DNA of 64,000 nucleotides from Anolis carolinensis (lineage: Eukaryota): contig NC_085846.1 in NCBI RefSeq assembly GCF_035594765.1, positions 99,993,190 through 100,057,189 on the forward strand. The letters are read 5' to 3'. Positions 2,334-38,296 of the stretch are shown in pieces. The notes beneath the pieces were generated by a model. The model saw nothing but the letters and a program-made list of their open reading frames with translations. It did not search any database and had not been told where the DNA came from. The position numbers and the translations under genes were made by a program. The stretch's first letter is position 1; every line of letters begins with the position of its first letter.

Positions 2334-2423
2334 CCTCAACACACAAACGTTTGCTTCTGGTATCTGCCTCCTAGTTTACGAAATATGGAGGATAATGAAG
2401 AAAGAATGAATCGACTTTCAAAG
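2334..2423 (+). CDS. GAD2: GAD65 penultimate coding exon: [30 protein letters not shown]
   Basis: ttccattag| acceptor, AAG|gtaaat donor, 90 nt phase 0/0; GAD65-type EDNEERM..LSK. Confidence 0.95.
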
Positions 2424-5060: not shown

Positions 5061-5876
5061 ATCACTGCCAACTCCTTGGAAAACCAAGGGTCTGGTTTGG
5101 CTCTGCTCCGTGAGAGGAGCTATTGTGTCCACCATCCAATCTCCCTTTCAGTGCAAGAGCCACATGCTGGGAGGTGGGCATCCAAACTCTGTTTAAATGC
5201 CTTCAAAGAAAGTCCCCTATCTTCTTGAACTGCATTTACTGTCAAGAAATTCTTCCAATTTTACAATTAAAGTTACACCCATAACCTGGAGAGGGGCCAT
5301 TGGGCAATGTTTTTTTCCTTCCTTCAAAATGTAGTCAGCCAACCTTGATTAATCTGAGGGTGTTCCTGCACATTTGATTGGTGTTCTAGATTTCTACTCC
5401 AAAGTTCTCTTCTAATGGCAGCTCTGGTCACATGTGTAGTTTGATCCTGACATTAAGAACAAGTTTACACTGGCCTGTTAATCCAGATTTAGTCTGGAGT
5501 AGAAATGCTGCAGACTGGCCTTGGAGGTGATCACACATACTGTCCCAAAGCCAGAGCGATGGCAGGTCAGGGTCTATATGGTCCAGCTGGGTTGAGCCTT
5601 AACCATTCATATTACTCTTGCCATTTCCAGATAGCCACAGAGCTCCTTTACTAATGAGTGCAGGGAATAGGGGTTGGTGGAAGTGCCTTGTGTGGACAAA
5701 GTACCAGTGTTCTGCCCTGTAGCCACAGGGTTGCTCCAGAGTTTTAGCCAAATTGTAGAGCATTCCCCAATTTTCCTAACATGGGACTAAACCAGATTAA
5801 CCCAATTTACCCTGTGATACCTACCACAAGAAGCAACCATGCAATGCTCACATGATTTCATACTGTGTTTGTGAAG

Positions 5877-6050
5877 GTGGCCCCAACAATTAAAGCCCGA
5901 ATGATGGAGTGCGGTTCCACTATGGTCAGCTATCAGCCTCTGGGAGACAAGGTCAACTTCTTCCGTATGGTTATCTCCAATCCATCAGCAGCTCACCAAG
6001 ACATCGATTTTCTGATTGAAGAAATAGAGCGCCTTGGGCAAGATTTATAA
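5877..6050 (+). CDS. GAD2: GAD65 terminal coding exon [57 protein letters not shown]
   Basis: gtgaag|GTG acceptor; GAD2-diagnostic residues [18 protein letters not shown] and HQDIDF (GAD1 has KALMME, VGYQPQGDKANF, QSDIDF); TAA 6048-6050. Confidence 0.97.
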
Positions 6051-23989: not shown

Positions 23990-25327
23990 ACAGCTGCCAA
24001 GTTGTACTTACTTAGTATTGATGAAAGTGTTCTCAAAGAAAGTCCTTTTTATGCTAGTTATTATCTATGAATAGTTGATAAAATTTGAAGTAAGAAACAG
24101 AACTTAAAGCTAATTGACCTATGTTTGTTCTTGCAGGGAATGTATGCATATTTTCTCAGAAGGAAGTGTCACTGCAACCAATGAACTTACTCTGTAGCAA
24201 GCCCATTTAAGAACAGCTTTAGTAAATTATTAAAATTAAAATAACCATTGACTGACAGCTATGGTAAATCACTAAAAGGTTTGTTTGCTGGTCTCAGCTG
24301 AGACATGTCTTATGTGCTTTTTTGTGTTTTGGTTTCAGCCTGCAGGCATGGAAAAAATAATTACTTTGTACAAAATATTAAAACATTGGAACCGTAAGAT
24401 AAGCAAAACCCGGCAAATTAAATAAACTAGCAGTCTGAATGAGATGGCCTCCCAAGAAGTCTAATGTTCTTTCAAGCATGAAATAAAGCACATTGCTTCA
24501 AGTACCTTTATCCATTTGGCACAAGATAAATGTCTTTACCGCTCCTGCCTTCTTTCTTAATAAAAACCAACAAGCCCTTTCCTTCACCAAACAAAATATT
24601 TGACAGAGTCTACGGAAAGCTTTGTCCAGTTTTAGTCTTCCAAAATGAACATCAGCTTATTTGTGTGTGATTAAAGCATCTGTAACCCTCTTCTGAAGTC
24701 ACCTGCTTTCAATCTATCAATAGTCCCGGGCATCCTTTGTGCTCCTCTCCGCAAGGGCCATATTCATGCAATTCAGATGCGATTACGGGTTTAACTCATT
24801 CAATAGTTTGCACTTGCTTTGAAGGGATTACATGAAAGCTACTATGCATACATAGCGGTTACTGAGCCAGTCATGAAGCAAGCAGGTGAAAGTAGACTTC
24901 ACAGCAGGAGGAGGGAAGAGAGACTTAGGCTGTTGCACTGCAACTCACATTATCTCCCATGATTTGAGTGTTGATATAAAATAAGAAGAGTCACTTTAGC
25001 TCCAGGAAACCCACCCAAAAAAGATTCCCCCCCCCAATTTTGAAACAAAATCCTTAACATCTAAAAAAAGGGAGAAACAATAACAACAATACATGACTCA
25101 ACATAGTTGCCTGGATTTTTGGATTCTTCTTGAGGATTTATGGACATTTCTGATTATTCTGAAGTACATTATGAAGCTTTTCCTAGAATGGAGATGCATT
25201 TGCTCACATTCTACATACAGAAAGATCTCAGATACTATCCCATAAACACAACATTGCTACTATCAATCCTATTATGACCAAACATTTTTTAAATAAAATA
25301 TCCTAATTTAATAAGATAATTTTATAC

Positions 25328-28770: not shown

Positions 28771-29279
28771 ATTGTTTTAGGTAGTACCATGTTGCCAAGT
28801 TGTCTTTTGATCAGCCCACTCCACTTCTGAGTCTATTCAGGGGCTTCCAAGTTTCCCATCCTTGGTTTGACCCTGGAGGAAGACCCTTATGGGGGGCCAT
28901 CCAATTGGGATTTCCTGGTATAGCTGCCCATACTCTTGCTGTTGCTGGGGGAACATTAAGAGGAGTGGTGGTTCTCATGAAGCTTTTCCTTTATTTGAGT
29001 CTACTGGGAGGAGGCTAGCAGCCATGTAGTGGATGGCTTTCACAGTATTTGCAGATTCATGGCTCCATACAAAGTCCAAGAATATATTCCCTATATGGAG
29101 TCTACTTCCATTTTAATCAACCATATAATACTCTTCTTGTTGTGCCTTCTCTATTCTCTCCCATCCAAATATAGCTGGAGAAAAGAAAACGACCAACACA
29201 GTCTTACTGGATGTTCCTCCTCATAGTTCCATAATCCTAACATTCATCTGGTTACATTTTAGTTTCATCCTGGGATTTG

Positions 29280-30799
29280 CTAGGATGAAATCCATAAGAC
29301 AGATAGGCTGGTTCCAGGTCCATGAGCAATATGGTTGATTCTTCCACGCACACAATCAAGAGAAATAGATATCATTGTACCATTGTGAACTTCAAAAGAA
29401 AAGTGAAAGCTAACACTGGTCCAGATGCTTCCTTCTGGCATTTGACCTCCAACTTGCTGGGCAATTGCATGAGGTTGCACATGATCACCAGTGAACTGGT
29501 TTAGAGTTACTTGGAGCATGTTACAGGAGTGGATCAGCTTTAAAGTCAATGCAACACTGGCTACTCCACTTTCAGTGAACAAAACATATTTCTGAGCATG
29601 CTGTCCAGTAGATATCAGATAGACCTGCTTCTCAATGGGTGAGACCTGCATAAAATCCAGTAACTTGTTCCTGACAGCTCCTGTGGGCAGCCCCTTAATG
29701 GAAACTGAGGCTGAAAGAGCAGCAGACACCGCAGATGGGATCCAGATGAGGCTAAGCATGCTAATTCCAGAACCATCTCCAAAATAACGAACATTGCATT
29801 GTGCTGGTGAAAGGATCTCAAAACTAATAAGATCCCCAGCTCCAACTCTGGTGGCCCCGGAGGCAGATATTGATGTGTCTCTGTAATTGACACCAGACTT
29901 ATAAACGGTCATCAATTCTGAATTGGTGCCATTTCTGTTGAGATAAGAAACCAGTGAAAAACCTTCACGGACACAGGTCTGACCCATGGAGTATAAGGCT
30001 TGGTGAAACACAAACTTTACAACACCAGTTTCAGTAAACTTGATGGCTTTCCCATCATGGGACAACGTTAGCATGTAAGGATCAGAAACAGAACCTAATT
30101 TAAAGGTGGGTCGATAGCTGTTTTGGTAATGCATCGCCGTAGTAGTCTGTGCAGTCATGGCCACGGCTCCTGTATCATGTGATAACCAAAACAAACTGAA
30201 GGGTGTGTTGAGGTCATAAATGTTTAAATCTTTGCTTTGGTTGCAGAATTGATTAGGGCTCTTCAAAAACACTGAGAGAGTTTGGCTCGGCTCTACCTCT
30301 GCAGCACCACTCAAGCTGACGCCCTGGAAAATTTTACCTTCTGGCTGTTCGATACGAACCCCACTCAGCTCATAGCCTTCCTCACTGTTGTTGACTTTGA
30401 GAGAAAGTTGGAGGAAATTCCTGCAGCTGTGTTTCACAGCAAAATTGAAGTCAGCCCACATTAAGCCATGTTGCTTGAATATTAAGCTGTTGCTTGCCAC
30501 TGTTCCAATGTTGCATTCCTGTTTTGCCTTGATGGGCAAATTGAAACCGGGATAGACTTGAGATGTGCCAAATTTTGTCAAGGGGAAAACAAGGTTTGCA
30601 GCCCATGACTCAGACAACTTGCTTTCACTGGCTGTTGAACAAACGGTATCACTTACAGTGGAGCAAGGGAAAGCGACCACCCCAGTATCACATATAAGAC
30701 ATGCTTGACACTCCTGTAGCTCTTTGTTAAAGAAGTACTCCTCACCACACAGTCCCAAAGCAGCTTCTTTTTCTGCAATCCCAAGACACCGGAATCCTC
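29280..30799 (-). CDS. Uncharacterised secreted protein, last coding exon (1520 nt): end of cbEGF, TNFR Cys-rich repeat 2, three tandem C1q/TNF-like domains, stop
   Basis: tctttccttcctgtcaacag| acceptor, phase 1, continuing in frame into the 492-aa ORF; TAG at 29282-29280. Confidence 0.93.
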
Positions 30800-31760
30800 C
30801 TGTTGACAGGAAGGAAAGACAATGTCAGCCACAACCCTGTGTTTAATTATTTCACGAGAATCATGATATTCTGTATTTCTACAGGTCTGTTGGGTAGGCC
30901 ATCCCATTGGGCACAGTTAAGCATATTTCTTATTTATAATTCCTGAATAGGCTCATCTGCAAAGGAGTATTTTACTAGATCATGGTGGGGAAGAGGCTCA
31001 GACCTCCTCTACTCATAGTCAAGGGATGGCTCAAGGCCCCTACTTATGGTGTCTCCAATTGTTTGGGTTTTCATTGATCAATTCATTCCACATCTCTGTG
31101 TGAGTACAAACAATACGTTGGAAGCAAAACCAGCCTATTGTCTTTGTTCTTGGGATGACTCATGCATGTGTCAAAAAGATACATTTTTTCCTTTCTATCA
31201 CATAGACAGAACACCTCTCCTGATGGTACCTTTCATCTACAGTTTTTATAAGCACTTGTATTAAAAATAACACTAAGAACCATTTCAACATTTTTCATTC
31301 AGACTAACCAAAAACACATTGTCTATAGTGCCCTTCGGATATGTGCAGCCTAAATCTTGATGTTAAAGGAGACCCACTAAAACAGTGGGATATGCCTAAA
31401 AGTATTGACTCACCACTCAGCAGCTGACAGAATGTGTCTAGTCCAGTTGAGCATAACCAACAGAATGCCAGCTTACATCTACAGCTCCAATCATCCCCAG
31501 TATTTAGGGGATGATTTTAATTATAGAATAACTTATCTAGAGGGCACAGCATTGGAGAAGGCCAATCTATGTGTTTTTAATAGTAAACTATATTGGCTCC
31601 AATTGAGGCATCTTGACAAATTAATAATGACTAATATAAAGACACATCTATATAATATAACCAAGGTATAACCACATCTCTCTGTATGCCACCATGCTTT
31701 AAAATGCATAATGCGTAAACCTGCCCATTTTCATTAATTCTTAGCAAAATAGCAATTTAC

Positions 31761-31827
31761 CTGGAGTGTTCAGGCATTTTATCTTTTCCCCACAGATGCT
31801 TGGTGATTCAACGCACTCATCTCTGTC
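31761..31827 (-). CDS. Same gene, 67-nt coding exon: calcium-binding EGF-like DRDECVESPSICGEKIKCLNTP(G)
   Basis: ctatttttag| acceptor and CAG|gtaaat donor; phases 0/1 bridge the flanking exons exactly; D-x-D-E-C and C-x-N-x4-F-x-C motifs; too short for the ORF track. Confidence 0.92.
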
Positions 31828-32714
31828 CTAAAAATAGTAAGAGTCAAGTTCAAACCCAAATCACTCGTTTCTGGGAACATTCTTATCTCCACAATCAGAA
31901 AAGGTGGACACCAATTATACACACTTCAAAACCAGAGGTTACAGCACAGCTTGGAAGAGTTACTTTTTTGACTACAGCCATAAACACTGAACTTGTTTGT
32001 TGAAGGATATTTCTGAGATCCAAACTATAATTATAAACATGTAATTGCTAACTCTTACATTTGTATCAGATATAAATTAAATCACTGTTGTCATGTGCTA
32101 ATCTCTTGCGTTTAACAAAGTTCAAATGAATTAATGTCTTTTCCAATTTATTACTGTGATCACAACTTTCCCTTCAGAGATCAAGTTCTGTATACTCTGA
32201 ACTTCCAAATCATGTAATAGATTTTTTGTCCCCTTCAGGTTTTCTCCTTACTATATTTCCTGTTCTACATAACAAAATTGTCAATTTATTCTATTTCATC
32301 TCTTTTCAGCAAACAACAGTCAGCCCTCAATATTTATGAGTTTTACTTTTGCAGATTTGATTATTCATGAATGTAATTACATTGTTCTCCCTGGGAATCT
32401 CTAGGTACTCCAGTGTGACTCTATGGTTAACCTTCATTGGAAGTTCACCATACAGTCATGTTGGAGAATTAGAGATGCCGAAAGAGAATACCTCTGTAGG
32501 AATTTCTCAGTTCTCCACAGCAATTCTATGGTCAAATTTGAACAGAAGTTAACTACACAGTTATGTGGGAGGACTTAAAATAACAATTCCACCTGTTCAC
32601 TTTCAAGGAGGTTCTATGTCTCTAACCTCGGTGAATGTGAAGGGCTGACTGCAGTGGTAAATCCTCAAAAGCGTTAACCATAAAAAAAAAAATCCGGGAG
32701 GGCCATAGTTGAAC

Positions 32715-33046
32715 AGAACCCCCGATGGCGCAATAGATTAAACTGCTGAGCTGCTGAACTTGCTGACCAAAAGGTTGGCAGTTCGAATCCAGGAAGCAGG
32801 GTGAGATCCCGTTGTTAGCCCCAGCTTCTGCCAACCTAGCAGTTCAAAAACATGCAAATGTGAGTAGATCAATAGGTACTGCTCCAGCGGGAAGGTAATG
32901 GCGCTCCATGAAGTCATGGCAGCCACATGACCTTGGAGGTGTCTATGGACAATGCCAGCTCTTCAGTTTAGAAATGGAGATGAGCACCAACCCCCAGAGT
33001 TGGACACGACTAAACATAATGTCAGGGAAAAACCTTTACCTTTTAC
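32715..33046 (+). mobile_element. Sauria SINE
   Basis: Family sequence with acctttacctttt tail. Confidence 0.9.
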
Positions 33047-33110
33047 TATCACAGTTGACCTCTTCTGTTTTAAAAGATTCACACTCTTTCTGCCATAAAA
33101 GGCTTAAAAG

Positions 33111-33189
33111 TTTAATATAAAGAGCATTACGTTACAAAAAGGATGATCTCTGCCCATCCTTTTTGTAACGTAATGCTCTTTATATTAAA
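33111..33189. repeat. Perfect 35-bp inverted repeat with 9-nt loop
   Basis: tttaatataaagagcattacgttacaaaaaggatg (33111-33145) is the exact reverse complement of 33155-33189. Confidence 0.95.
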
Positions 33190-33427
33190 TTTATATTATA
33201 TTTTCAGGGATCTCCTTTCTTCGCAAACAAAATTCAGTAGTGGAGAGGATGAGAGGGAAAAGCATCTAGATCTAGGTCTCAATCATAATAAGCACAAATT
33301 GAATAAATAATAACATAACTAAACCCATTATGACACATTACTTAAAGACAGATACAGTCTTGATCTTCAACTACTGTGATGGTGACTCTGTTTACTGTTG
33401 AAGTTTAAAGAATTGACAATACTTTAC

Positions 33428-33966
33428 CTGACATATCCGATCAGCATTTGAAGAACACTCAGACAGCTGGAAAAAACCAGCAGGACATAAGGTGCATTTT
33501 TCACATTGCGAGGGTGTATTTTGGAAATTGCAAAATTCATCACTTTCACAAAGGCCACAGTCCATTAAAGGTTCTCCAATATCAATCACTTTTGCATCAA
33601 CTTCTATTTTATGCACAGAGTAGGATTTCTGGAGATGATTCCTGGCTTGGTTCTGGAGGCCTTGGAGATTGGCTTCAAAATAATGCTGAATATCCTCTTG
33701 CAGACCCTGAAATGACATTTGTTTCACTGTGTCAAAAAGCATGCCATACTGGACCTTGATCAGGTCCATTTGCTCATACATTTTCCTTTGTTGTTCAATA
33801 ATTTCCAGCTGCTGAGTGGCCAATACATTCTGTTGCTCCATTAGTTTTTGCTGTAAATCCATCATTAACGTCTGCTGGCTCTTCAAAGCTTCAACAAATT
33901 TCTCTTGCCCTTTGGTAAGCTGGAGCTGAAGCACAAGTGCATCTTCTGATGGGACTTCGTTTTCTC
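33428..33966 (-). CDS. Same gene, 539-nt coding exon: Gln-rich coiled coil and TNFR Cys-rich repeat 1
   Basis: tttgtattttag| acceptor (phase 1), CAG|gtaaag donor (phase 0); ends CEKCTLCPAGFFQLSECSSNADRICQ. Confidence 0.93.
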
Positions 33967-35613
33967 CTAAAATACAAACAACAACTAGGCATTTAATTTC
34001 TTTTCTTACAACTGCCACCATTCTTCTTTAGAAACTATGAATCTGTGTCTCTCCCATCTGTGTGCCATCCTGATGTGTCGTACTATACATCTGATAGCCC
34101 CTACATCAGCTGAGAAATGATGGGCATGGTAGTTGGTACATTTGGGTGGTACCATGTTGGGAAAGGCCGTTTTAGATAACCACTATGTGATCATTCAGCT
34201 CTGTACAGCCAAAGGGCAGAAATGAATGAAGTCAGATACCCGTCAGGAAAAAGGCATTCAACTTCCATGAAGCTAGGCAAACAAACAATATTCTTGCACA
34301 GATTGATAACACTAAAGTCTTCATCTGGCACACTTTGCCTAATGAAGGTGATTAGCATAATCCAGAGCTTGCAAACGCTCATCACTGAGAGTATTTCTGG
34401 GTGGTTAGTAAGATACATGCCTGTTGCTATCAACTGCCAGCCCCTATATTGGGCTTCGCTCATTGGCACTCCAATCTGACAGCCAGATCAGCAAAACATT
34501 CCTGTCAAATGTCCATCAAATGTCCAAAGTAGCATCATTCAGGTTGGGCTAGACTAGGGGTCCTCAAACTAAGGCCTGCGGACTAGATGCAGCCCTTCAA
34601 AGTAATTTACCTATCCCCTGCCATAAACCTAAGACTTAGGGTCACGCAAAGTCTGAAACTACTTGAAAGCAAGCAACAACAATTTTAATTAAATTGACTA
34701 TCTCATCAGCCAAAAGCAGGCTTAAACTTTCCATTGAAATATTAATGTTTATATTAGTTAAAATTGTTCTTCATTTTAAATATTTTATTGTTCTTTCATG
34801 TTTTTGCACTACAAATAGATATGTGAAGCATCCATGATCAATTATTATGAAGAGTCCCTTTCCAGCAATTAGCATAGCTAGAACTTTGAGGAACTTGGTC
34901 CCAGGAGTGAAATCAGACAGTGTTTGCAGGAACCACCCAAAAGTGTTTCACTCCTCTTCCCTGTTTGTCAAACAAAGGGCAAAGTTGGGTTCCTTGCCAA
35001 AAAGTCATCCAGACTCATCAGTTGGGAACCCATTATAGATTTGCCAGGGTGATAACAGGAGAGGGAATTTCAGATTTTGCTTGTTACCTGGTTTGTAACA
35101 ATCAATGTTGCTGACATTCCCTCTCTGTATAACCATTAAAAGTCCAGAATCCATCTATGGATTTGAATCCATCCAGCCTTGAAGCTAATCATGTAAGTGG
35201 GCATAACTTGCTCTTCCAGAGCATCTCCCTATCCTGAAATAATACATCAATCAAACTCAATGAAACTTTATATCCTCCCCCATCTCCCCATGAGGACTAA
35301 GGGCAACTAATTCCTACCTATAGCTTGTATCTTATTTTTTAAGAATTTGAATACCACAAGCCTGTCTCAAGGACTTATTGCTTCTGTATGTGAATATGTT
35401 CTAATGTACTTTCTTGTTATAAAGCTAGCATTACATCTACCTATTCTACAACCACTGGAAGAACCAGAGCAAATGACTTGACCACAGATAGTTACTTGAC
35501 AACAGTTTTCAGCAATCCCCAGCCAGCATTGTGACATAATCCAAAAATAATCACTTCTCCAAGTTGTGAAGAACATAGAATGCTTCTATAATCTTTCAGA
35601 GACTGCCACCTAC

Positions 35614-36238
35614 CTGGTTTAACATCACACGTAAGCTGAACGCCTAGAGCGCCACCTCCTAAATCCGACGCTGTGTAAGCAAGGTCTTCCCCAATGAACT
35701 GGGCAGCTATCTCAGCTGCTCTGACCAGTGTGGGTTCAGGACATCCTTCTCCCTGGTTCGGTGAGCATGGCATAGCCTGACCAGCTAGTCTGGGCTTCTG
35801 GCGAATGCGCAGGGCCAGCCTACACTCAAAGCCTTTGCAATTCTGGGCAGTGCCATTCGGAGCCCTTGGGGTGCAGTCTCCTCCTCCTGGGCAATTCTCC
35901 CTTGTGTTCTTCATGGCCAGAGATGCATGTTCAACACCTCTCCCCACAAGAGGATATTGCTCCTGCTGTTGTTGGACAGATAGGTATAGCTTGCTGTGGG
36001 GTTGTCCTCGCACAAAGGTGCCCATGTGGGCAAAAGTACGGGAGGAGCGATTTGCCCTGCCTGAGCAATGGGATCCTTGGCACAGCTGTCTGCCAGGTGG
36101 TTGCTCATCCTGGCTGCTCCTGCTACATGGGGGGCTTCTACAGAGTTCGGTGCTAACGTCTCTTCCCTCTCCAGTCAGAAACCAAAAGCACACAACAAGC
36201 CAGCAACAGCAAGTCCAGCTGGGCTGTCCCAACAGCAT
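35614..36238 (-). CDS. Same gene, first coding exon: signal peptide MLLGQPSWTCCCWLVVCFWFLTGEG and Cys-pair repeats
   Basis: tctcttacag| acceptor 12 nt upstream of the ATG; CAG|gtaggt donor phase 1; exons 625+539+67+1520 = 2751 nt = 916 aa plus stop. Confidence 0.88.
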
Positions 36239-36312
36239 CTCTGGTCACATCTGTAAGAGATTTATTTAGAATTTATTTACTTACATGTGTAGATACCACC
36301 CAGTCAAATGTT

Positions 36313-36637
36313 TAAAAGGTAAAGGTAAAGATTTTCCCCTGATATTAAGTCTAGTTGTGTCCGATTCTAGGGGTTGGTGCTCATCTCCATTTCTAAGCCG
36401 AAGAGTTGGCGTTGTCTGTAGACACCTCCAAGGCCATGTGGCCGGCATGACAGCATGGAGCACCATTACCTTCCCAGTAGAACAGTACCTATTGATCTAC
36501 TCACATTTGCAGGTTTTCAAACTGATAGGTTGGCAGAAGCTGGGAGCTCACCCTGCTCCCCAGATTTGAACTGCCGACCTTTTGGTCAGCAAATTCAGCA
36601 ACTCAGCGGTTTAACCCGCTGTGCCACCAGGGACTTC
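36313..36637 (-). mobile_element. Sauria SINE
   Basis: Family sequence; TSD agtcaaatgttta. Confidence 0.9.
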
Positions 36638-36699
36638 ATAGTCAAATGTTTACTTACGGAAATTTTATAAATTTTATAGAGTTTTCTAAGGCACTTTTT

Positions 36700-38255: not shown

Positions 38256-38296
38256 TTATATGTGTCCTTGGAACTCTGTGAATCCAGCCTCTGGGT
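38256..38296 (-). other. Candidate 41-nt 5'UTR micro-exon of the uncharacterised gene
   Basis: Strong tract cttgtttgtctttttctttttctgaaatag| and TAA|gtaaga donor on the minus strand. Confidence 0.45.

What the first reader, a model, noticed from the sequence alone, without database searches (positions are those of the whole stretch)
29280..36238. Unnamed 916-aa secreted mosaic protein: coiled coil / TNFR / cbEGF / TNFR / 3x C1q-TNF-like
Seen: four minus-strand exons with canonical GT-AG sites and matching phases (1,0,1) join without stops into 916 aa. One of them is a 67-nt EGF exon that the ORF track misses. The protein has a hydrophobic N-terminus, no internal transmembrane stretch and several N-x-S/T sequons (NRS, NGT, NNS, NQS). 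Established: the Cys patterns match TNFR/NGFR repeats and calcium-binding EGF. Inference: it is a secreted oligomeric ligand, decoy or matrix protein. I know no named vertebrate family with this architecture; EMILIN/multimerin have a coiled coil plus one gC1q, and OPG/DcR3 have TNFR repeats but no TNF-like head.
Basis: partly seen in the sequence, partly recalled or inferred. Interest (0 to 1): 0.9.

Follow-up and report, generated by a model that had tools for sequence, protein, structure and literature searches.

The report
Natural single-chain TNF/C1q trimer protein
This real, expressed lizard gene, found across chordates but apparently lost in placental mammals, encodes a seemingly unstudied, probably secreted protein whose tail is predicted to fold by itself into a complete three-part TNF/C1q head, carried on a stalk of TNF-receptor-type repeats.

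Summary
The gene model is right. All three junctions appear in RNA-like runs from three studies and not in a DNA run. Each exon matches Anolis carolinensis RefSeq XP_008110602.2 at 100%. Selection is strongly purifying (rough dN/dS 0.05-0.22).

The gene is not unnamed: chicken and zebrafish records call it NELL3/nell3. That is a misnomer. It lacks LamG and VWC domains and resembles NELL2 only in a short calcium-binding EGF stretch. I found no paper on it.

The three C-terminal domains are mutually homologous and invisible to Pfam. AlphaFold models superpose as one body on engineered single-chain APRIL-BAFF-BAFF, C1q, Cbln1 and adiponectin trimers (Z 32-39, rmsd about 3 A over about 390 residues). 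This predicts a natural single-chain TNF/C1q pseudo-trimer.

Orthologues occur in sharks, fish, amphibians, sauropsids, monotremes, marsupials and lamprey, with distant relatives in a tunicate and several in amphioxus. No placental sequence was found. Synteny with GAD2 is conserved in stickleback.

Best reading: a secreted, coiled-coil-oligomerised, multivalent C1q/TNF-fold ligand or matrix adaptor. Partner, tissue and function are untested.

The parts
38256..38296 (-). Upstream non-coding exon; donor GTAAG next to 38256. The 5' border 38296 is inferred from a polypyrimidine-AG, and more 5' sequence exists.
   Evidence: Loose ends of RNA contigs at 36250 map to 38256-38285
35614..36250 (-). 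First coding exon (ATG at 36238; aa 1-208)
36164..36238 (-). Probable signal peptide, aa 1-25; Cys/Trp-rich and only moderately hydrophobic here, Leu-rich in frog, fish and amphioxus relatives
   Evidence: hydropathy; helix 8-21 in the A. sagrei model; SignalP not run
35741..36142 (-). Low-confidence (probably disordered) N-terminal region with five Cys pairs, mostly C-x-G-x-x-C (aa 33-166), kept across jawed vertebrates
   Evidence: pLDDT <50
33428..33966 (-). Coding exon 2 (aa 209-388): end of the conserved LTCD motif, coiled coil, TNFR repeat 1
33623..33904 (-). Coiled coil, aa 230-323; over aa 236-291 the a positions are 100% hydrophobic and d positions 73% Gln in 31 vertebrate rows
33428..33559 (-). 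TNFR cysteine-rich repeat 1, aa 345-388, eight Cys
   Evidence: Pfam TNFR_c6 E 3.2e-07, above cut-off
31761..31827 (-). 67-nt exon 3: first three Cys of the truncated calcium-binding EGF (D389, D391, E392, N408)
29280..30799 (-). Coding exon 4 (aa 411-916 and stop)
30639..30749 (-). TNFR cysteine-rich repeat 2, aa 428-464, six invariant Cys
   Evidence: Pfam E 1.7e-05, below cut-off on its own
30174..30623 (-). TNF/C1q-fold domain 1, aa 470-619 (invariant C536, C596)
29736..30173 (-). TNF/C1q-fold domain 2, aa 620-765 (invariant C686, C745); best conserved of the three
29283..29735 (-). TNF/C1q-fold domain 3, aa 766-916 (invariant C836, C893)
28990..28995 (-). AATAAA polyadenylation signal, about 28 nt before the inferred common 3' end of two RNA contigs
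   Evidence: contig lengths (end inferred assuming colinearity)

Best explanation
A secreted, glycosylated, multivalent C1q/TNF-fold ligand or extracellular-matrix adaptor of chordates. SHOWN: spliced expression, purifying selection, domain order, internal triplication. PREDICTED: the three C-terminal jelly-roll domains, joined by linkers of only a few residues, close on each other into one asymmetric TNF/C1q-type trimer with three different grooves, so one chain does the job of a C1q-like heterotrimer. INFERRED: the hydrophobic-a/Gln-d coiled coil and the lone conserved Cys204 before it bundle several chains (most likely three), and the N-terminal Cys pairs may cross-link further. The TNFR-cbEGF-TNFR segment is a disulfide- and calcium-stiffened stalk that spaces the heads from the bundle. 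The result would be a bouquet of heads that clusters a conserved cell-surface or matrix partner, working like cerebellin/C1QL, EDA or EMILIN/multimerin rather than like a fast-evolving immune cytokine.
For: Junctions. dN/dS 0.05-0.22, and 70-80% identity to birds, turtles, frog and platypus over exon 4. Rigid-body match of all three domains to single-chain trimers 4zch (Z 38.3, rmsd 3.0, 399 aa), 5hzf (34.0), 5kca (33.0) and 4dou (32.4), against at most 16.4 for single protomers; repeated in a second model. Domain-domain HHalign probability 91-97%, reversed controls under 1%. Heptad pattern and Cys parity. Residues 199-226 are 89% identical among jawed vertebrates yet low-confidence in a monomer model, as expected of an oligomer interface. 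No predicted membrane helix after the N-terminus.
Against: No binding, localisation or tissue data; the RNA runs carry no tissue label. The pseudo-trimer is a model, and AlphaFold may have seen the engineered single-chain structures in training. No multimer prediction was possible, so the oligomer state rests on sequence pattern. The Anolis signal peptide is atypical and was not scored by SignalP. The amphioxus expansion, including a kringle-bearing copy, is more typical of recognition proteins.
Confidence: 0.55

Rival explanations
1. Innate pattern-recognition lectin or opsonin, like bivalve secreted proteins with three tandem C1q domains: the heads bind microbial glycans.
For: Three-domain C1q proteins of bivalves bind peptidoglycan and LPS (PMC5519582; PMC6835236). 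Amphioxus has at least six divergent relatives.
Against: One cluster per amniote lineage in the searches and low dN/dS across the head. No Pfam C1q match in any of 37 members. No sequence link to bivalve proteins in an exhaustive search.
Confidence: 0.15
2. Self-recognising module: the TNFR repeats dock in the grooves of the TNF-like head, in the same chain (masked ligand) or in a neighbouring chain (head-to-stalk polymer).
For: Receptor-type and ligand-type modules stay together from amphioxus to marsupials. TNFR repeats are the canonical binders of this fold (established knowledge).
Against: Repeat 2 ends about six residues before the base of the head. In known TNF-TNFR complexes the receptor runs from ligand base to tip in N-to-C direction (own knowledge), so canonical docking in cis is geometrically unlikely. 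The hinge 467-469 has pLDDT <50 and full-length pTM is 0.55, so no docked state was predicted. Docking in trans was not tested.
Confidence: 0.13
3. Soluble decoy receptor like OPG or DcR3: the TNFR repeats capture a TNF-family ligand and the rest serves for oligomerisation and anchoring.
For: Two TNFR repeats and no membrane anchor; weak sequence similarity to DR5, DR6, p75 and DcR3 ectodomains.
Against: Only two repeats, separated by an EGF, whereas OPG and DcR3 have four contiguous ones (own knowledge). Nearly half the protein is a conserved head this reading does not explain. Single-repeat binders such as BCMA and Fn14 mean it is not excluded.
Confidence: 0.1
4. A true NELL paralogue acting on Robo3 or ROS1 through its EGF, as the database symbol implies.
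For: Symbol NELL3; NELL2 is the best PDB sequence hit of the stalk (E 2.9e-08); both have a coiled coil.
Against: The match is confined to the cbEGF and the residues just before it, and ADGRE5 scores nearly the same. No LamG or VWC, and one truncated EGF instead of six.
Confidence: 0.03

Closest known systems
Engineered single-chain TNF/C1q trimers (APRIL-BAFF-BAFF 4zch, C1q 5hzf, Cbln1 5kca, adiponectin 4dou)
   Same: Three jelly-roll protomers in one chain packed as a trimer; Z 32-39, rmsd about 3 A
   Different: Those are laboratory constructs; this one is natural, 9-14% identical to them, and has three diverged domains
Bivalve smultiC1q proteins, e.g. HcC1qDC6
   Same: Secreted; usually three tandem C1q domains, sometimes with a coiled coil (PMC6835236, PMC5519582)
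   Different: They are recognised by sequence as C1q domains and expanded in tandem arrays; no TNFR/EGF stalk is described in the passages read; no sequence homology detected
CTRP4 (C1QTNF4)
   Same: Secreted vertebrate protein with tandem C1q domains and no collagen (PMC9952994)
   Different: Two domains, oligomerising between chains through the second; no coiled-coil/TNFR/EGF stalk
EMILIN/multimerin
   Same: Signal peptide, Cys-rich N-terminus, coiled coil, C-terminal gC1q (own knowledge)
   Different: One gC1q per chain trimerising between chains; EMI domain; no TNFR repeats
OPG and DcR3
   Same: Secreted proteins with TNFR repeats
   Different: Four contiguous repeats and no TNF/C1q head (own knowledge)
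NELL1/NELL2
   Same: Secreted, coiled coil, cbEGF; shares the database symbol
   Different: NELL2 has LamG, six EGF and five VWC domains (PMC7083938); here no LamG, no VWC and one truncated EGF

Membership tests
NELL family | LamG domain | tested here: not met
   No Pfam hit in 37 members; models show none
NELL family | Five VWC domains | tested here: not met
   Cys inventory
NELL family | Six EGF domains | tested here: not met
   One four-Cys EGF
NELL family | Coiled coil | tested here: met
C1q/TNF structural superfamily | TNF/C1q jelly-roll fold | tested here: met
   Single-domain Z 13-16 to APRIL, EDA, CD40L, BAFF, C1QL1; predicted models only
C1q/TNF structural superfamily | Three protomers packed as a trimer | tested here: met
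   Within one chain, in two models; not shown experimentally
C1q-domain proteins (C1qDC, CTRP, smultiC1q) | Sequence match to Pfam C1q | tested here: not met
   0 of 37 at E 0.1
CTRP / C1q-like type I | Collagen stalk | tested here: not met
   No collagen hit; none in the sequence
TNF superfamily ligands | Pfam TNF domain; one THD per chain with a type II membrane anchor | tested here: not met
   No Pfam TNF hit; three domains per chain
TNF superfamily ligands | Binds a TNFR-family receptor | not testable with these tools
   Needs binding assays
C1q branch versus TNF branch | Closer structural similarity to one branch | tested here: inconclusive
   Best single protomers APRIL 16.4, EDA 16.2, CD40L 16.1 versus C1QL1 14.8, at 8-17% identity
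Decoy TNF receptors (OPG, DcR3) | Four contiguous TNFR repeats | tested here: not met
   Two repeats split by an EGF
Decoy TNF receptors (OPG, DcR3) | Binds TNF-family ligands | not testable with these tools
   Needs binding assays
EMILIN/multimerin | EMI domain and a single gC1q | tested here: not met
   No EMI or C1q Pfam hit
Calcium-binding EGF | D-x-D/N-E before Cys1 and C3-x-N-x4-F/Y-x-C4 | tested here: met
   D389, E392, N408 invariant, D391 nearly so
Calcium-binding EGF | Six cysteines | tested here: not met
   Four only
nell3 / si:ch211-37e10.2 orthologue group | Full-length homology, same exon structure, synteny | tested here: met
   (four exons at the same positions from zebrafish to dunnart); GAD2 downstream in stickleback and in the window; tree

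The most novel reading that the evidence does not exclude
A chordate-wide, unstudied signalling family in which a natural single-chain heterotrimeric TNF/C1q head and TNF-receptor-type repeats in the same polypeptide act on each other or on a still-orphan conserved receptor, and whose loss is a shared event of placental mammals.
Probability: 0.3. Interest if true: 0.88.

Novelty: new variant of a known kind. Interest (0 to 1): 0.7.

Why it matters
Single-chain TNF and C1q trimers have been engineered as tools and drug formats. This appears to be a natural vertebrate version, missed because Pfam sees nothing in the 450-residue head and the gene is filed under a misleading NELL symbol. It adds a deeply diverged branch to the C1q/TNF superfamily, puts ligand-type and receptor-type TNF modules in one chain, is under strong constraint from shark to opossum, and is a candidate placental-specific gene loss. 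All of this is directly testable in zebrafish, Xenopus, chicken or opossum.

Tried and rejected
Artefact or chance splice model: rejected. Processed copy: rejected, the DNA run holds the introns. Wrong first exon (my early doubt): rejected, it is spliced in RNA and homologous in birds, turtle, snakes and fish; 682-aa database models that start in exon 2 look truncated. Loss in all therians (my early guess): rejected, seven marsupial species have the gene. NELL membership: rejected. Membrane anchor at 756-774: rejected on the models. Pfam and PDB sequence searches of the head gave nothing. The ESM Atlas feature search gave only scores under 0.8 and nothing for the coil region. A search from the amphioxus head found only itself. 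Literature searches for nell3, the clone names, LOC ids, the GAD2/APBB1IP loss and a natural single-chain trimer found nothing relevant; the library lacks most subscription journals and supplements are not searched. APBB1IP exons are not in the window. The careful tree did not finish; the quick tree was used. Platypus exon 1 was not found within 10 kb upstream.
Full report
OBSERVATION. The four exons have canonical borders, phases 1,0,1, and give 916 aa without a stop; the window has no N. Contigs of three RNA-like runs from three studies skip exactly the three introns and show no depth over unique intron sequence, while a DNA run covers all bins and shows none of these joints (991 letters laid). 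The runs are labelled RNA by guess only, but their splice pattern identifies them. Two contigs continue past 36250 into a non-coding exon whose donor is next to 38256. Both are inferred to end near 28962, about 28 nt after an AATAAA.

HOW THE SEARCHES WERE DONE. The window's model was searched exon by exon by reference; the joined model was not sent to any search tool. It was joined only inside one local script to check the frame. Full-length analyses used proteins that the tools returned (P0314, P0230).

IDENTITY. Each exon is 100% identical to Anolis carolinensis XP_008110602.2, LOC103279099, 'uncharacterized protein'. Exon 4 is 70-80% identical to bird, turtle, alligator, snake, frog and platypus proteins, and 50-60% to teleost nell3 (si:ch211-37e10.2) and si:ch211-252f13.5. 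The chicken record is called NELL3. The same four coding exons, split at the same residues, occur in zebrafish, stickleback, manakin and dunnart. In stickleback the gene lies between an RA-PH gene and a 585-aa pyridoxal decarboxylase, which I read as APBB1IP and GAD2. The last two exons of the GAD2-like gene lie in this window in the same convergent arrangement. Nei-Gojobori dN/dS against an agamid, cobra, manakin and platypus is 0.05-0.22 where computable; dS is near saturation, so the values are rough.

RANGE. An exhaustive search of 1.84 billion representatives returned 29 hits. The named distant ones are lamprey, Styela and six amphioxus clusters at 26-45% identity, all with TNFR and EGF modules before the head, one with an added kringle. 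A search from the platypus protein lists monotremes, marsupials, all sauropsid groups, amphibians, basal ray-finned fish and sharks, but no placental mammal among the best 120, which reach down to 58% identity. A placental orthologue would be expected well inside that range, so loss in placentals is likely but is an argument from absence. Several short unnamed fragments are closest to marsupial or platypus sequences at 47-71% identity, as pseudogene remnants would be. Their origin is not recorded and could be human, so I did not fetch or pursue their contigs, and they are not counted as evidence. In the quick tree the two teleost groups form one clade (SH-aLRT 100), consistent with a teleost duplication.

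THE HEAD. Pfam finds only TNFR_c6 and EGF_CA in all 37 aligned members, never C1q or TNF. AlphaFold of exon 4 gives three all-beta units (mean pLDDT 82.8, pTM 0.82). The top structural matches are all engineered single-chain trimers: APRIL-BAFF-BAFF (Z 38.3, rmsd 3.0, 399 residues), C1q (34.0), Cbln1 (33.0) and adiponectin (32.4). Single protomers follow at Z 16 and below. A second model, of the A. sagrei orthologue with a different alignment, gives the same result. The three domains are homologous to each other (HHalign 91-97%; reversed controls under 1%). Each keeps one invariant Cys pair at equivalent places, and the linkers are only a few residues long. This indicates an old internal triplication that folds as an intramolecular trimer. 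Whether the ancestor was nearer TNF or C1q is unresolved.

THE STALK AND N-TERMINUS. Repeat 1 has eight Cys and repeat 2 has six. Between them the EGF keeps the calcium consensus but only four Cys. Its similarity to NELL2 covers the cbEGF and the residues just before it and is nearly matched by ADGRE5; this probably explains the symbol (inference). NELL2 has LamG, six EGF and five VWC domains (PMC7083938); this protein has no LamG, no VWC and one truncated EGF. Residues 230-323 form one long helix with a clean heptad over 236-291: a positions 100% hydrophobic, d positions 73% Gln. Gln-layered coils are often trimeric (own knowledge). A lone, nearly invariant Cys204 precedes the coil in a 28-residue segment that is 89% identical among jawed vertebrates but unstructured in the monomer model.

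MECHANISM. Shown: expression, splicing, constraint, domain order. Predicted: pseudo-trimeric head. Inferred: secretion, bundling of about three chains by the coil and Cys204, a calcium-stiffened stalk, and clustering of a conserved partner by several asymmetric heads (0.55). Rivals are a pattern-recognition lectin (0.15), stalk-to-head self-docking (0.13), decoy receptor (0.10) and true NELL (0.03). No experiment on function was found.

NOVELTY. The locus is annotated and named. Three tandem C1q domains in one secreted chain are known from bivalves (PMC6835236, PMC5519582) and two from CTRP4 (PMC9952994), so the principle is not categorically new. I found no description of this architecture, of the head's fold, or of the gene's apparent placental loss in the searchable library. 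Two notes of this scan on the same stretch proposed the pseudo-trimer and the receptor-plus-ligand combination; they are not independent support, and I tested the first directly. Verdict: real gene, new variant of the C1q/TNF kind, interest 0.70.

Noticed in passing
window 2334-2423 and about 5874-6050 (+): Last two coding exons of a glutamate decarboxylase (GAD2-like), convergent with the gene; 58-84% identical to the stickleback neighbour of nell3.
   Followed up: partly
window 33637: All four laid runs read A instead of G, giving His319 to Tyr at a position that is His in most orthologues: an allele or a reference difference. Two further differences (36032, 36125) are silent.
   Followed up: no
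window 36250-36245 (-): The first coding exon begins with a start-stop ATG-TGA, 12 nt before the main ATG.
   Followed up: no
window 24292-24847: Non-coding stretch downstream of the gene conserved in an agamid (69% over 582 nt) and partly in manakin (69% over 168 nt); possible regulatory element.
   Followed up: no
P0001, P0002, P0003, P0007, P0009, P0018 (bird and turtle isoform models): Isoforms about 70 aa shorter whose match to exon 2 breaks down in its second half, suggesting a splice form lacking TNFR repeat 1. Not seen in the three anole RNA runs.
   Followed up: no
P0128, P0131-P0134, P0136 (amphioxus); L005: At least six divergent relatives; one has a kringle before the coil. In L005 a 720-aa and a 745-aa product share the first exon and use different large terminal exons, and the part after aa 71 has no introns.
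   Followed up: partly
ESM Atlas sponge cluster (248 aa): Matches two tandem head domains by shape (TM 0.84 over 241 residues of that cluster); tandem TNF/C1q domains may be older than chordates. Homology not tested.
   Followed up: no
L001 26307-28967 (-): The zebrafish paralogue si:ch211-252f13.5 has a 316-aa annexin downstream rather than GAD2 within 10 kb.
   Followed up: no
window 32700-33050, 36310-36640 and other places: High-copy SINE-like repeats account for the depth spikes in the read tables and for several spurious ORFs.
   Followed up: no
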